IMG/VR virus record: IMGVR_UViG_3300001782_000005
Span: 213,132-277,131 of that record
DNA: 64,000 nucleotides
Strand: one strand, 5' to 3'
This document shows positions 30,266 to 33,642 of the stretch, piece by piece. The notes beneath the pieces are model-generated. The model saw only the letters and a program-made list of their open reading frames with translations. It made no database searches and was not told the origin of the DNA. A program made the translations under genes and the position numbers. Within the stretch, counting starts at the first letter, position 1, and each line of letters opens with the position of its first letter.

Positions 30266-30550
30266 ATGAATCCGATAGTCGAAAGGTATTTGAAAATAAT
30301 ACAAAGATTGCCCTCCACATACAATCGCTTGAAGGAGATTGAGAAGGATGTAAGTGGTAGGATAGTTAGAAGTTTGACTAATCCTCAATTAATTGAGTTA
30401 CATAGAAAATGTCATATGCTTTATGGAGCATGGACAAAGAAGGGAAATGTGAAGAGAGAAGCATTTGAATTTCTTTTCAATGTACATGAAAAAATAGTAG
30501 AAGAAATGCTTCGTCGAAAAATAAATCACAATACTCCGCTGGAGATTTAA
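30266..30550 (+). CDS. Hypothetical protein
   Basis: ORF preceding the tRNA. Confidence 0.55.
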   Translation: MNPIVERYLKIIQRLPSTYNRLKEIEKDVSGRIVRSLTNPQLIELHRKCHMLYGAWTKKGNVKREAFEFLFNVHEKIVEEMLRRKINHNTPLEI

Positions 30551-30562
30551 AAATGAATACAC

Positions 30563-30630
30563 GCGGAGGCCGGGTGGCCGGGATGGACCTTCCAAGTCCA
30601 GAAGGGGTTCGACTCCTCTCCCCCGCTCCA
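30563..30630 (+). tRNA. tRNA-Gly(TCC), atypically short (68 nt, reduced D arm)
   Basis: Acceptor GCGGAGG/CCCCCGC, T73 discriminator + CCA, anticodon arm TGGAC-CTTCCAA-GTCCA, T arm AGGGG-TTCGACT-CCTCT. Confidence 0.8.
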
Positions 30631-30640
30631 AAAAATCTCT

Positions 30641-31030
30641 CCACTATGCTACAAAAATCCCTCCGATCTCAGCATAGTGGTTGGTGCGAGTCCAGCCCAT
30701 GCCGTCTGCGAATCTGCGGCCCTAGACACAGTTCGCACCAGAAAATCCTGACTGTGACTAGCCGACTCCGAGGGAAGATGTGGTTTGAGGAGCCCACCCC
30801 TTTTTAACAAGATTCGCATCTCCTCGATGCTATTGCCGCTGCCTTTACCTCTGATCTGCCGGGGGTTTGTGTGGTGTTTTGAGTCATGTCAATTCGTGTC
30901 TGCGGCCCTGCACGTGGTAGAGTTCGGTCCACACTAGAAAAAGGCCGCTGAACTCGTCCTCCTTTGGGATAGATGTGGCTGAGGGGGTCCACTCCTTTTT
31001 TAAAAGGGTCGCAACCCCCTCAATTTTTTT
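30641..31030. ncRNA. Candidate large structured ncRNA next to the tRNA
   Basis: GC-rich, no credible ORF; stems CCACTATGCT/AGCATAGTGG, TGGTGCGA/TCGCACCA, GCGGCC/GGCCGC and TGAGGGGG/CCCCCTCA + T-tract. Confidence 0.45.
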
Positions 31031-31048
31031 CGTTTATAGAAGGAGTGA

Positions 31049-31477
31049 ATGATGAATAAAATTGATGAGTTGAAAAAATGGTTCGAAGAAATTGCTAGAT
31101 ACTGTCGAGTTGATAGGTTTCTAGAAGTCGTTGAAGATGAGGGAGAAGGAGATGGGAAAGGTTATGAGCATCGACTACGAGTTAGGTTATATACAAATGA
31201 TCATAAATATGCCATAGTTGCTCATGACCGCAGTAAGGACAAAGGTTACCTTGGTTGTGTAGTATCCACAAGAAAACCAAGAGCTGGAGAAGACTGGACT
31301 CGTGGTAACGATTTAGCGGATGGCCCTTTTGAGAAGGAGACGTGGGAAAGAATTAAGAATGATATTATTGCTTATGAATTGGTTCCTATTACACTAAAAG
31401 TTGAAGCTAAGGCAGATATTCCAGTAGAGGGGCCTTCAATTGAACCAGGAAATGAGGTTCAGGATGTTGGATGCTGA
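31049..31477 (+). CDS. Hypothetical protein
   Basis: RBS AAGGAG. Confidence 0.65.
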   Translation: MMNKIDELKKWFEEIARYCRVDRFLEVVEDEGEGDGKGYEHRLRVRLYTNDHKYAIVAHDRSKDKGYLGCVVSTRKPRAGEDWTRGNDLADGPFEKETWERIKNDIIAYELVPITLKVEAKADIPVEGPSIEPGNEVQDVGC

Positions 31478-32123: not shown

Positions 32124-33098
32124 ATGGCGAAAAGTGGAGAACTCACAAACAAGTCTTTGGCAAAAAGAATTGATAAATTTATAGATAACCGAATTTTAGT
32201 TGTTGGTGATATAATAGTAGATGAATTTATATGGGGTCATGTCAAAAGAGTTTCCCCCGAAGCTCCAGTCCCAATAGTTAATGTTGAAAGGCGATCCATG
32301 ATGCTCGGAGGCGCCGGAAACGTAGTACATAACATTATTTCTTTGGGGGGAAATGCTACAATCTGTGGAGTAATCGGGAGTGATTCTACAGGATGGAAGT
32401 TACGAGAAATGCTTATAAGCATAAGCAGCCCTACCGACTATATTATAATAGATGAAGGAAGACCAACTACTGTAAAAACTAGAGTAGTAGCTCACTCTCA
32501 GCAAGTTGTTCGAGTCGACCTGGAAGATACAAAACCTATTAGCTCAGAATATACCAAGAAAATTCTAGATGCAATTACTGACCAATTACCAATACTACAC
32601 GCTATTATAATTGCTGATTATGGAAAGGGTGTTGTTACTCAAGAGCTTATGGACGGAATTCGCTCAATTATACCTAATGATCTTATTTTAGCAGTAGATC
32701 CTAAGGTACAGAATATAGAATTATATAAAGGGGCCACACTAATTACTCCTAATTCTTATGAAGCTAAACTTATGGCAAATACAGATACTATAGATGAAGC
32801 TGGTCGATTACTACTCGATAAACTTAATTGTAAGACAGTATTAATAACACGTGGGGAAAAGGGAATGACCCTTTTTGAAGATAATCAAATTATCCAAATA
32901 CCTACAATAGCAAGAAAGGTTTTTGATGTATCTGGAGCGGGTGATACTGTAATTAGTACCTTTACTCTATCGTTAGTCTCTGGACTAAACTCAAAGCAGG
33001 CAGCAATACTTGCAAATGCTGCAGCCGGTTTGGTGGTTGCAGAGGTTGGTACTGCTGCTATATCAGCAACTAGATTAAAACAATTTTTATTGGAGTAA
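32124..33098 (+). CDS. rfaE1: D-glycero-beta-D-manno-heptose-7-phosphate kinase (HldE kinase domain)
   Basis: ILVVGDIIVDEF, RVSPEAPVP, GGAGNV, DYGKG, ITPN, VFDVSGAGDTV. Confidence 0.92.
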   Translation: MAKSGELTNKSLAKRIDKFIDNRILVVGDIIVDEFIWGHVKRVSPEAPVPIVNVERRSMMLGGAGNVVHNIISLGGNATICGVIGSDSTGWKLREMLISISSPTDYIIIDEGRPTTVKTRVVAHSQQVVRVDLEDTKPISSEYTKKILDAITDQLPILHAIIIADYGKGVVTQELMDGIRSIIPNDLILAVDPKVQNIELYKGATLITPNSYEAKLMANTDTIDEAGRLLLDKLNCKTVLITRGEKGMTLFEDNQIIQIPTIARKVFDVSGAGDTVISTFTLSLVSGLNSKQAAILANAAAGLVVAEVGTAAISATRLKQFLLE

Positions 33099-33141: not shown

Positions 33142-33642
33142 ATGCTGAACGATCAAGAAAAGAGAAGTCCGAAGATGGTGATAATGTGCGGACTACCGAA
33201 GAGCGGGAAATCGACAATAGTGGACCGAGAATTGCGGGAGTACCAAGTCATTTGTGGTGATGATATTAGACTTGCACTTGGAGTTGAATTTGATCCAAGA
33301 CTAGAAGAATTTGTGTGGGGTACATTTAATACAATGGTAAGAGCTAGTCTAATTAGAGGATTAGATGTAGTTCTTGATGGAACACATACAACAAGATTTA
33401 GAAGAGAAAGAGTTATTAATTTAGGGAAAGAATATGGAGCAGATATAACAATCATCCATGTAAAAACTCCATATGAAACTTGTATCAAAAGAGCAATCGA
33501 ATCAGACTTTCCACTAGCTGTCATGGAAAGGATGCGAGCTAATCTAGAGCTTGAACCTCCATCGGAAGAAGAAGGTGTAGAAGTAGTTGAGAAGAGTGTT
33601 GAAATTATTCACGGAGCTGTTGTAATAACTGGATACAATTAA
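33142..33642 (+). CDS. P-loop kinase (AAA_33 / polynucleotide-kinase-like)
   Basis: CGLPKSGKST, DDIR, VVLDGT. Confidence 0.8.
   Translation: MLNDQEKRSPKMVIMCGLPKSGKSTIVDRELREYQVICGDDIRLALGVEFDPRLEEFVWGTFNTMVRASLIRGLDVVLDGTHTTRFRRERVINLGKEYGADITIIHVKTPYETCIKRAIESDFPLAVMERMRANLELEPPSEEEGVEVVEKSVEIIHGAVVITGYN

What the first reader, a model, noticed from the sequence alone, without database searches (positions are those of the whole stretch)
30641..31030. ~390-nt GC-rich structured non-coding region directly after the tRNA
It has several perfect stems, a repeated TCTGCGGCCCT 11-mer and a terminal hairpin plus T-tract, in a genome that is otherwise densely coding. Large structured phage RNAs such as GOLLD and ROOL often lie beside tRNAs, but I cannot assign a family.
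Basis: partly seen in the sequence, partly recalled or inferred. Interest (0 to 1): 0.6.

Follow-up and report, generated by a model that had tools for sequence, protein, structure and literature searches.

The report
Tandem pseudoknotted small RNAs, uncatalogued family
The 390-base GC-rich gap in this 277-kb phage genome is two back-to-back copies of an intricately folded small RNA, absent from the RNA catalogues searched, that the phage carries three times and shares with sulfate-reducing sediment bacteria; the fold is well supported but what the RNA does is unknown.

Summary
It is two tandem, homologous units (A 30641-30830, B 30833-31030), each holding a ~150-nt core with six helices that form two pseudoknots joined by a long-range helix. 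A third, diverged copy lies 205 kb away in the same phage genome. Relatives occur in four or five related phage contigs, in Desulfobacteraceae and Nitrospirota MAGs and in sediment and peat metagenomes.

Across 26 copies, 92% of cells are paired and 20 of 39 pairs change on both sides; slid controls give 38-50% and 4-10. RNAalifold on a plain MAFFT alignment recovers the nested helices. The RNA is 87% identical between two phages whose adjacent protein is 54% identical. There is no conserved ORF.

Rfam 15 gives no match, so it is neither GOLLD nor ROOL, and no paper was found. The upstream "tRNA" is a sub-threshold tRNA-Gly(UCC)-like element with a truncated D arm.

Six bacterial copies have their own sigma-70-type promoter ending just before the first helix, and orientation to neighbouring genes is mixed. 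This points to a stand-alone RNA gene rather than a leader.

Function is unknown. My best guess is a stable trans-acting RNA, released in the phage from a tRNA-like-A-B precursor. No expression data exist.

The parts
30563..30630 (+). tRNA-Gly(UCC)-like element. Acceptor stem GCGGAGG/CCCCCGC with one A.C mismatch, discriminator T, encoded CCA. Anticodon loop CTTCCAA, T loop TTCGACT. The D arm is reduced to CCGG-GTGG-CCGG.
   Evidence: Read from the sequence. ARAGORN default finds nothing; relaxed or mitochondrial modes call tRNA-Gly(tcc). The best Rfam hit is tRNA-Sec at 16.5 bits, E 2.8. It is almost invariant between the window and L004.
30641..30680 (+). Unit A, 5' hairpin P1 (10 bp perfect, 20-nt loop). 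Specific to the phage copies and not part of the conserved core.
   Evidence: I4. Kept in L004 and L065. Absent from the bacterial copies, whose promoter ends just before the core.
30681..30830 (+). Unit A core. H2 30683-89/30733-39; x:y 30707-15/30810-18; H3 30723-32/30751-60; S1b 30771-74/30798-801; S1 30780-83/30794-97; T 30787-92/30820-25. H2 crosses H3 and x:y, and T crosses S1 and x:y, giving two H-type pseudoknots bridged by x:y.
   Evidence: CM hits of 155 bits (R1) and 134 bits (R2). Pair-by-pair check. Covariation.
30833..30865 (+). Unit B 5' spacer with a weak P1-like hairpin (ACCTC...GGGGT). It shares CCTC.GATCT with the P1 loop of unit A.
   Evidence: reading of the sequence. Weakly supported.
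30866..31025 (+). Unit B core. H2 30869-74/30929-34; x:y 30901-09/31005-13; H3 30920-28/30947-55; S1 30975-78/30989-92; T 30980-88/31014-22.
   Evidence: CM hits of 154 bits (R1) and 115 bits (R2). Compensatory differences from unit A in every helix except S1, which is GTGG/CCAC in both.
31024..31030 (+). Run of seven T directly after helix T of unit B. Probable transcription stop of the tRNA-like-A-B unit. The T loop can alternatively close as CCTTT/AAAGG.
   Evidence: I6. Not called by the consensus terminator scan because of the 25-nt loop. Its function as a terminator is inferred.
31049..31477 (+). Next gene (142 aa, no family), with its RBS AGAAGGAGTG at 31037-46. Used as the anchor to find related phages. 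It is not part of the RNA.

Best explanation
The region encodes two tandem paralogous copies of a stand-alone, compactly folded small RNA from an uncatalogued family. The core is ~150 nt, and the phage adds a 5' hairpin.

Each copy folds into two H-type pseudoknots (H2/H3 and S1-S1b/T). A 9-bp long-range helix (x:y) ties them together by pairing loop 1 of the first pseudoknot with loop 3 of the second.

The family lives mainly in Desulfobacteraceae-like bacteria, where it is a sporadic, often multi-copy gene with its own sigma-70-type promoter. The jumbo phage has picked it up and keeps three copies.

Inferred steps: in the phage, A and B are made as one precursor with the upstream tRNA-Gly-like element. 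RNase P and 3' tRNA-processing enzymes cut at that element and free the RNAs, and transcription stops at the hairpin plus T7 of unit B. The mature RNAs then act in trans through their tertiary fold, most likely by binding, sequestering or scaffolding a host protein, with the phage copies mimicking or out-dosing the host's own RNA.

Shown: the homology, the fold, the strand, the lack of coding capacity, the promoter in bacterial copies and the distribution. Inferred: transcription in the phage, processing, trans action and the partner.
For: Copies and relatives:
- Tandem duplication with a 195-nt period.
- Third copy in the same genome at G000:C1:38998-39161, minus strand. It scored E 7e-9 with a model built without it, and it has compensatory changes in all helices, including S1 GTGG/CCAC to ATGG/CCAT.
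- The RNA is 87% identical between the window and L004, while the adjacent protein is 54% identical and the flanking DNA is not alignable.
- Pattern scans plus the CMs recover more than 25 distinct copies in metagenomes and MAGs.

Fold:
- 39 pairs are 92.2% paired; 20 pairs change on both sides; 0/500 shuffles reach the observed values on four of five measures (14/500 on further pair types); slid controls give 38-50% paired and 4-10 pairs.
- Helices T and H2 were not in the CM, so their support does not come from model fitting.
- RNAalifold on a plain MAFFT alignment finds x:y, H3, S1b and S1, with 15/25 pairs compensatory.

Strand and independence:
- G.U 50 cells against A.C 25.
- TTGACA-17-TATGAA promoter conserved in six contexts, ending ~5 nt before H2.
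- Orientation relative to neighbouring genes is mixed, and many copies converge on the upstream gene with nothing downstream to regulate.

Non-coding and uncatalogued:
- No conserved ORF: frames differ between A, B and the main group, and indels are not multiples of three.
- Rfam gives no family.
Against: - No transcript evidence. All runs that hold the locus are DNA metagenomes, and the contigs show no variation.
- The trans-acting, protein-binding role is a default inference from fold complexity and gene independence. No partner protein co-occurs.
- Some copies do sit 25-95 nt upstream of a co-oriented ORF (units B and C; L066, L072, L090, L068), which a leader model would predict.
- In bacteria the element behaves like a decaying interspersed repeat: truncated copies, a 305-nt tandem unit, and ORFs that run into its end. 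This fits a mobile element as well as an sRNA gene family.
- Part of the alignment was fitted to the nested helices.
- The whole-locus MFE z-score is unremarkable.
Confidence: 0.5

Rival explanations
1. Part of a mobile or selfish genetic element. The RNA, or its DNA, would be the non-coding module of a non-autonomous repeat, mobilised in trans: a guide or scaffold RNA of a transposon nuclease or recombinase, or a recombination site such as an integron-like cassette boundary.
For: - Sporadic distribution: 5/52 genomes in the family, 2/151 in the order.
- Multi-copy with truncated and decayed copies.
- Tandem 305-nt unit.
- Copies punctuate gene blocks in a defence/TA island: type IIG RM, ParA, AAA_15+DUF4435, PIN, SHOCT.
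- Two ORFs end inside the repeat.
- A weak DDE_3 transposase match and a group II intron lie nearby.
- It is present in a phage.
Against: - No transposase, RT, TnpB/IscB or integrase is consistently adjacent.
- No terminal inverted repeats or target duplications were seen.
- The attC boxes (RYYYAAC...GTTRRRY in that order) are absent.
- Sequence is conserved across phyla, unlike attC sites.
- A pseudoknotted fold with G.U bias and its own promoter points to an RNA product.
- One copy sits among housekeeping genes.
Confidence: 0.17
2. Self-cleaving ribozyme or RNA-processing module. Each unit would cut itself, or be cut, so that tandem and polycistronic transcripts are resolved into monomers.
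For: - Tandem head-to-tail copies in the phage (195 nt) and in L067 (305 nt).
- A conserved pseudoknotted core with an almost invariant unpaired AGAU bulge and other invariant single-stranded bases.
- From general knowledge, small ribozymes are common in phage and prophage intergenic regions and often cluster.
Against: - No similarity to any ribozyme family in Rfam.
- The helix order (H2 x H3 H2' H3' S1 T S1' y T') differs from HDV-like and glmS folds.
- Bacterial copies start at the promoter with the first helix, so there is little to process.
- No read-end data exist.
Confidence: 0.12
3. Cis-acting 5' leader (riboswitch, attenuator or 5' stabiliser) of the downstream gene. Helix T plus the T-tract would act as the expression platform.
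For: - Units B and C end 24-28 nt before the next start codon.
- Unit B ends in a hairpin plus T7.
- The T loop (CACTCCTTTT) is complementary to the downstream RBS (I1).
- L066, L072 and L090 have a small ORF ~45 nt downstream.
- Alternative pairing of y (local CCTTT/AAAGG versus x) is possible.
Against: - Many copies face the 3' end of a convergent gene and have no downstream gene (L059 x3, L055, L062/L067, L083, L084).
- The downstream genes are unrelated to one another.
- Unit A is followed by unit B, not by a gene.
- Only unit B has a T-tract.
- The loop-RBS complementarity does not covary between the window and L004 (reading).
Confidence: 0.12
4. Not a functional element: chance stems in a GC-rich spacer, or a protein-coding ORF (e.g. 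30553-30807, or the minus-strand ORFs).
For: MFE z-score of only -1.05. Mechanical ORFs of 50-84 aa overlap the region.
Against: Homologues exist across phyla with covariation. RNA conservation exceeds that of the neighbouring protein. Frames are not conserved, and indels of 1, 2 and 8 nt occur.
Confidence: 0.02

Closest known systems
GOLLD and ROOL RNAs (large ornate phage/prophage ncRNAs)
   Same: Phage-borne, GC-rich relative to the genome, strongly structured with pseudoknots, next to tRNA-type genes, function unknown. They also occur in both bacteria and their phages.
   Different: Those RNAs are ~600-800 nt single units; this one has a ~150-nt core in tandem copies. Rfam models for them give no hit even at E<=10. 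The family also occurs without any tRNA nearby and with its own promoter. Whether it multimerises like GOLLD/ROOL (Kretsch et al., bioRxiv 10.1101/2024.12.08.627333) is untested.
Phage T4 small stable RNAs C and D (species 1 and 2) in the tRNA cluster (from my own knowledge, not tested here)
   Same: Small stable phage RNAs of unknown function encoded directly downstream of tRNA genes and matured from a common precursor by tRNA-processing enzymes. This is the best architectural analogue for tRNA-like-A-B.
   Different: The T4 RNAs are not known as tandem paralogues with double pseudoknots, nor as members of a host RNA family.
raiA motif and similar orphan structured sRNAs
   Same: ~200-nt stand-alone RNAs with pseudoknots, their own promoter and terminator, and unknown biochemical function.
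   Different: Different sequence, fold and taxa (Bacillota/Actinomycetota against Desulfobacterota/Nitrospirota plus a phage). No Rfam match. raiA is single-copy and vertically conserved, whereas this family is sporadic and multi-copy.
Tandem sRNA paralogues (e.g. RsmX, LhrC, AbcR) and type III antitoxin RNA repeats (ToxI)
   Same: Head-to-tail arrays of homologous small RNAs; ToxI units also form pseudoknots and occur in phages.
   Different: Those units are 36-120 nt and act by base pairing, CsrA-type titration or toxin binding. No adjacent toxin gene, no multiple GGA loops, and no long antisense targets in the phage genome were found.

Membership tests
Any Rfam 15 family (including GOLLD, ROOL, tmRNA, RNase P, riboswitches, ribozymes, T-box, HEARO) | Covariance-model score at or above the family's gathering threshold | tested here: not met
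   0 matches over the whole window at gathering thresholds. At E<=10 on 30400-31200, only four chance-level hits of 11-16 bits. No hit on ten bacterial or metagenomic copies except an unrelated group II intron.
Canonical tRNA (for the upstream element) | Cloverleaf with a normal D arm, detected by ARAGORN or the Rfam tRNA model | tested here: not met
   ARAGORN default finds none. It is found only at -ps80 or in mitochondrial mode, as tRNA-Gly(tcc) with a 4-nt D loop. There is no Rfam tRNA hit.
Canonical tRNA (for the upstream element) | tRNA-Gly identity elements (G1-C72, C2-G71, G3-C70, U73, C35 C36; from established knowledge of bacterial GlyRS) | tested here: met
   Read from the sequence 30563-30630: GCG.../...CGC, discriminator T, anticodon TCC, encoded CCA. 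Aminoacylation itself is not testable here.
tmRNA | tRNA-Ala-like domain with G3.U, a tag ORF and detection by ARAGORN | tested here: not met
   ARAGORN tmRNA search is negative, also at relaxed threshold. The third acceptor pair is G3-C70. No conserved tag frame exists between the units.
Intrinsic terminator (end of unit B) | GC-rich hairpin with a short loop followed by a T run | tested here: inconclusive
   9-bp GC-rich stem plus T7, but the loop is 25 nt and the scan does not call it. An inner CCTTT/AAAGG stem could close the loop. Units A, C and the bacterial copies lack the T run.
Riboswitch / cis-regulatory leader | Constant position upstream of, and co-oriented with, functionally related genes | tested here: not met
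   Orientation is mixed, many copies converge on a gene's 3' end, and the downstream genes are unrelated.
Integron attC site | R'' RYYYAAC ... R' GTTRRRY in that order around an imperfect single hairpin; sequence not conserved between hosts | tested here: not met
   By eye on the consensus, only GTTAAAG ... CTTTAAC is present, in the wrong order. The element is conserved in sequence across phyla and folds as pseudoknots. No integrase could be checked on the short contigs.
Type I toxin-antitoxin locus / small protein gene | Conserved small ORF on either strand | tested here: not met
   The candidate frames differ between units A, B and the main and L078 groups on both strands (reading). Indels are not multiples of three.

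The most novel reading that the evidence does not exclude
The family is a new class of functional RNA with an activity of its own. One possibility is a self-cleaving or otherwise catalytic double-pseudoknot ribozyme. Another is an RNA that self-assembles or mimics a host RNA. The most conserved loop, CCAC(Y)CCUU, resembles the anti-Shine-Dalgarno tail of 16S rRNA. In this reading a jumbo phage has captured the RNA from its Desulfobacteraceae host and amplified it to three copies to take over or disarm a host process, for instance in the defence and toxin-antitoxin islands where the bacterial copies sit.
Probability: 0.12. Interest if true: 0.85.

Novelty: new variant of a known kind. Interest (0 to 1): 0.62.

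Why it matters
Structured RNAs with this much tertiary architecture (two pseudoknots locked by a long-range helix in ~150 nt) have usually turned out to be ribozymes, ligand sensors or cores of ribonucleoproteins. Few are known from Desulfobacterota or from jumbo phages of sediments.

This family is shared between a virus and its probable host lineage, is amplified in the virus, and in bacteria sits in defence and toxin-antitoxin neighbourhoods. It is therefore a concrete candidate for a phage-host RNA interaction. It comes with a ready alignment, a covariance model and clear mutational predictions.

It also shows that a degenerate tRNA-like element can accompany such RNAs, a likely processing signal that standard tRNA finders miss.

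Tried and rejected
- Rfam at gathering and permissive thresholds on the window and on bacterial copies: nothing.
- BLAST against GenBank phages and PLSDB plasmids: nothing.
- First pattern scan of IMG/VR: only the same phage, its close relative and chance hits. The second gave the same plus unit C. The main-type 3' domain pattern gave 0 hits in IMG/VR.
- More distant phages that carry the downstream 142-aa protein (L005-L016): no RNA next to it, and none in the three of their records that were searched whole, L005, L006 and L016.
- Sequencing runs: only DNA metagenomes hold the locus, with no RNA runs. Laying contigs gave identical sequence, with no variants, ends or joints. Expression is therefore untested.
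- Whole-locus MFE significance: not significant. Single-sequence MFE folds of the four units disagree with each other, so the structure was derived comparatively.
- tmRNA, RNase P, group I intron, HDV-like, glmS, T-box, ZTP, cobalamin and CsrB-type sponge readings: considered from helix order and motifs, and dropped for lack of defining features and of Rfam signal.
- Antisense or guide reading: the longest complementarities between the units and the rest of the phage genome are 12-14 nt, about chance level.
- RBS sequestration by the T loop: the changes between the window and L004 are not compensatory.
- Small-ORF readings on both strands: frames are not conserved.
- Literature: keyword and sequence-string searches and two 2026 ncRNA-mining preprints gave no match.

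Full report
**1. What is at the coordinates**

The window is the last 64 kb of a complete 277,131-bp phage record with direct terminal repeats. It holds a major head protein, tail-fibre-like and other virion genes.

Between the stop of a 94-aa ORF (30266-30550, a partial match to pyrimidine-dimer glycosylase) and the start of a 142-aa ORF (31049) lies a ~500-nt stretch without credible coding capacity. GC rises there to 52-56% against ~35% around it.

- perfect stems at 30641-50/30671-80, 30707-15/30810-18 and 30980-88/31014-22;
- the 11-mer TCTGCGGCCCT at 30713 and 30899;
- a run of seven T at 31024-30.

Taken alone these are weak evidence. The MFE of the whole stretch is only 1 sd better than shuffles, and MFE folds of the individual parts disagree with each other.

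**2. The "tRNA"**

ARAGORN at default settings finds no tRNA in the window. It does find four ordinary tRNAs elsewhere in the genome. Rfam's tRNA model does not hit; the best match is tRNA-Sec at 16.5 bits, E 2.8.

Read by hand, 30563-30630 is a tRNA-like element with these parts:
- acceptor stem GCGGAGG/CCCCCGC, with one A.C mismatch;
- discriminator T and an encoded CCA;
- a regular anticodon arm with loop CTTCCAA (anticodon UCC);
- a regular T arm with loop TTCGACT;
- a D arm shrunk to CCGG-GTGG-CCGG.

Relaxed or mitochondrial ARAGORN settings call it tRNA-Gly(tcc). It carries the known bacterial tRNA-Gly identity set (G1-C72, C2-G71, G3-C70, U73, C35, C36; established knowledge). It is almost invariant in the related phage contig L004. 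Whether it is charged, or only serves as a processing signal, cannot be told here.

**3. The 390 nt are two copies of one RNA**

Repeat finding and self-alignment show a 195-nt period (D1, D4, D6; 11). Unit A is 30641-30830 and unit B is 30833-31030.

The downstream protein was used as an anchor. This found two contigs identical to the window, and contig L004. In L004 the protein is 54% identical but the tRNA-like-A-B stretch is 87% identical over 483 nt. The flanking DNA gave no blastn match at all. The RNA region is therefore under stronger constraint than the neighbouring genes.

**4. The fold**

I compared units A and B of the window with units A and B of L004, pair by pair. This gives six helices. 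Coordinates are for unit A.

| Helix | 5' strand | 3' strand | Coordinates |
|---|---|---|---|
| H2 | GGTGCGA | TCGCACC | 30683-89 / 30733-39 |
| x:y | TGCGAATCT | AGATTCGCA | 30707-15 / 30810-18 |
| H3 | TAGACACAGT | ACTGTGACTA | 30723-32 / 30751-60 |
| S1b | AGGG | CCCT | 30771-74 / 30798-801 |
| S1 | GTGG | CCAC | 30780-83 / 30794-97 |
| T | GAGGAG | CTCCTC | 30787-92 / 30820-25 |

The order along the RNA is H2 - x - H3 - H2' - H3' - S1b - S1 - T - S1' - S1b' - y - T'. This means:
- H2 and H3 form one H-type pseudoknot.
- S1/S1b and T form a second H-type pseudoknot.
- x:y joins loop 1 of the first pseudoknot to loop 3 of the second.

Unit B has the same helices with different letters:
- x:y is TGCGGCCCT/AGGGTCGCA;
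- H2 is GTGTGG/CCACAC;
- H3 is GAGTTCGGT/GCTGAACTC;
- T is TGAGGGGGT/ACCCCCTCA.

**5. More copies**

*In the same phage.* A covariance model of the nested helices (R1) found a third copy in the same phage genome, 205 kb away, at G000:C1:38998-39161 on the minus strand. It scored 37.9 bits, E 7e-9. This "unit C" fills the gap between two co-oriented ORFs of unknown function and has no tRNA-like element next to it. All helices are kept through changes on both sides:
- x:y is TGCAATCCT/AGGATTGTA;
- H2 is GGCACG/CGTGCC;
- S1 is ATGG/CCAT;
- T is GGGGGT/ACCCCC.

*In metagenomes and MAGs.* A degenerate pattern written from the five copies was scanned over the metagenome and genome collections. The models then sifted the hits. 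This gave:
- three more contigs of related phages, with the same tRNA-like-A-B layout where the 5' flank was read (L065) (L060, L063, L065);
- a "main" group in Desulfobacteraceae-type MAGs and sediment contigs (L059 with three full copies and one decayed copy, L062, L067, L066, L072, L054, L068, L078, L079, L082, L090, L092, L094, L095);
- one copy in a Nitrospirota peat MAG (L055 = L077);
- a diverged "type 2" repeat that keeps only the 3' pseudoknot domain, with about ten copies, some truncated, in each of two MAGs.

*Distribution.* The family is sporadic: 5 of 52 genomes of the family and 2 of 151 sampled from the order. The genome search uses limited prefilters, so these are lower bounds. 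The main-type sequence is absent from IMG/VR, GenBank phages and PLSDB.

**6. Covariation**

I scored 26 distinct copies against the full pseudoknotted structure.

| Measure | Observed | Shuffled or slid controls |
|---|---|---|
| Cells that form a standard pair | 92.2% | shuffled 84.1%; partners slid 1-3 columns 38-50% |
| Pairs with changes on both sides | 20 of 39 | shuffled mean 12; slid 4-10 |
| Shuffles reaching the observed value | 0 of 500 on four of five measures (14 of 500 on further pair types) | - |

Helices T and H2 were not part of the covariance model, so their support (T: 97.6% paired, 3 of 5 pairs doubly changed) does not come from fitting.

RNAalifold on a plain MAFFT alignment of 15 diverse copies independently recovers x:y, H3, S1b and S1, with 15 of 25 pairs compensatory.

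G.U cells outnumber A.C cells 50 to 25. This points to the modelled strand as the RNA.

**7. It is an RNA gene, not a protein gene and not (generally) a leader**

*No protein.* No reading frame is shared between units A, B and the bacterial groups on either strand. Indels between close relatives are 1, 2 and 8 nt long.

*Own promoter.* Six bacterial copies in different surroundings share TTGACA-17 nt-TATGAA (or TAAGAA/TATGAG), ending about 5 nt before the first base of helix H2. The RNA therefore starts with H2 and has its own promoter.

*Mixed orientation.* Orientation to neighbouring genes varies:
- The phage copies, L079, L054, L068 and L078 are co-oriented with their neighbours.
- The three L059 copies, L062/L067, L055, L083 and L084 point against the flanking genes and face the 3' end of a convergent gene, with nothing downstream to regulate.

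*Varied neighbours.* Neighbouring genes include:
- housekeeping genes (thiolase, EF-P, GMP synthase, histidine kinases);
- defence and TA-type genes (type IIG restriction-modification, ParA, AAA_15 + DUF4435, PIN, SHOCT).

*RBS pairing not supported.* The complementarity between the T loop of unit B and the RBS of the next gene (I1) does not covary in L004. It is most simply explained as pyrimidine-rich loop against purine-rich RBS.

**8. How it most likely works**

Shown: a conserved, knotted tertiary fold; independent promoters in bacteria; three copies in the phage.

Inferred:
- In the phage there is no promoter-like site just upstream. The tRNA-like element, A and B are probably transcribed together from upstream.
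- The tRNA-like element recruits RNase P and 3' tRNA-processing enzymes, which release the RNAs. Phage T4's stable RNAs C and D in its tRNA cluster are matured this way (my own knowledge).
- Unit B's hairpin plus T7 ends the transcript.
- The mature RNA acts in trans through its shape.
- The phage copies either supply extra dose or act as variants of a host RNA.

I put about 0.5 on this stand-alone, trans-acting reading. Rivals are:
- a module of a mobile element (0.17): sporadic, multi-copy, decaying copies, a 305-nt tandem unit, two ORFs ending inside the repeat;
- a self-cleaving or processing RNA (0.12);
- a cis leader (0.12);
- no function (0.02).

That the locus encodes a real, conserved, structured RNA I hold at about 0.9 or higher.

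**9. Comparison with known things**

It works like other orphan structured RNAs of phages and bacteria (GOLLD, ROOL, raiA, T4 RNA C/D). It is a member of none.
- All 4227 Rfam models fail.
- The size and helix order differ from tmRNA, RNase P, group I introns, and HDV-like and glmS ribozymes.
- attC boxes are absent.
- Keyword and sequence-string searches of the paper library, and two 2026 ncRNA-mining preprints, gave no match.

I therefore treat it as an uncatalogued family.

**10. Limits**

- No RNA data exist for this locus.
- Collection scans need exact patterns, so remote members are missed and the distribution figures are lower bounds.
- Part of the alignment was fitted to the nested helices.
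- R-scape was not available.
- The host assignment (Desulfobacteraceae-like) rests only on the shared RNA and the marine-sediment source.

Noticed in passing
outside the window: G000:C1:38998-39161 (minus strand) = L045:1501-1664: Third, diverged copy (unit C) of the same RNA in the phage genome. It lies between a 269-aa and a 375-aa ORF of unknown function, has no tRNA-like element, and ends 28 nt before the next start codon.
   Followed up: yes
window 30563-30630: tRNA-Gly(UCC)-like element with a 4-bp/4-nt D arm and encoded CCA, missed by ARAGORN default and by Rfam. The genome's four regular tRNAs (Pro, His, Cys, Trp) lie elsewhere, at 70.8-78.8 kb of the genome.
   Followed up: partly
window 30266-30550, 32124-33098, 33142-33642: Neighbouring genes: a 94-aa partial match to pyrimidine-dimer DNA glycosylase (T4 DenV type), a PfkB-family sugar kinase, and an AAA_33/KTI12-like P-loop kinase. 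No link to the RNA was shown.
   Followed up: no
L059:2057-11337 (metagenome contig Ga0180009_10006977): Island of defence-type genes: type IIG Eco57I/MmeI-like RM, a ParA-like ATPase, and an AAA_15/AAA_21 ATPase plus DUF4435 (a PARIS-like pair). An RNA copy on the opposite strand follows each gene block. Two ORFs terminate inside the repeat's 3' extension.
   Followed up: partly
L083, L084, L086, L087; G005 and G006 genome-wide: A ~250-nt interspersed repeat ("type 2") with about ten copies, some truncated, per MAG. It keeps only the 3' pseudoknot domain (AGAU-AUGG-CC-GGGGA-CCAY-UCCUU) of the family.
   Followed up: partly
L072:1650-1767 (+): Group II intron domain (Rfam group-II-D1D4-2, 113 bits) lying back-to-back with an RNA copy at L072:1220-1364 (-).
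   Followed up: no
L066:2818-2988, L072:908-1174, L090:1386-1517: Small ORF starting MAEKLDP.ELV.F.ELLMANS..., ~45 nt downstream of three RNA copies. L066 has an in-frame TAG at 2884-86, and the L072 and L090 readings diverge from it early, as after a frameshift. There is a faint nitrile-hydratase-like (NHLP-type leader?) similarity.
   Followed up: partly
conserved loop of helix T, e.g. window 30989-31000; consensus CCAC(Y)CCUU(U)AA: The most conserved pyrimidine stretch resembles the anti-Shine-Dalgarno 3' tail of 16S rRNA (CACCUCCUUA, from my own knowledge). In the model it pairs with the purine stretch AGGG...GUGG. Its significance is unknown.
   Followed up: no
L078, L054, L082, L068, L066, L072, the ~45 nt upstream of the core: The promoter region is conserved well beyond the -35 and -10 hexamers (GATATCTTAAAATTGACAAGCATTATTGAACCATTGTATGAAAAAC). 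This suggests a regulator binding site.
   Followed up: no
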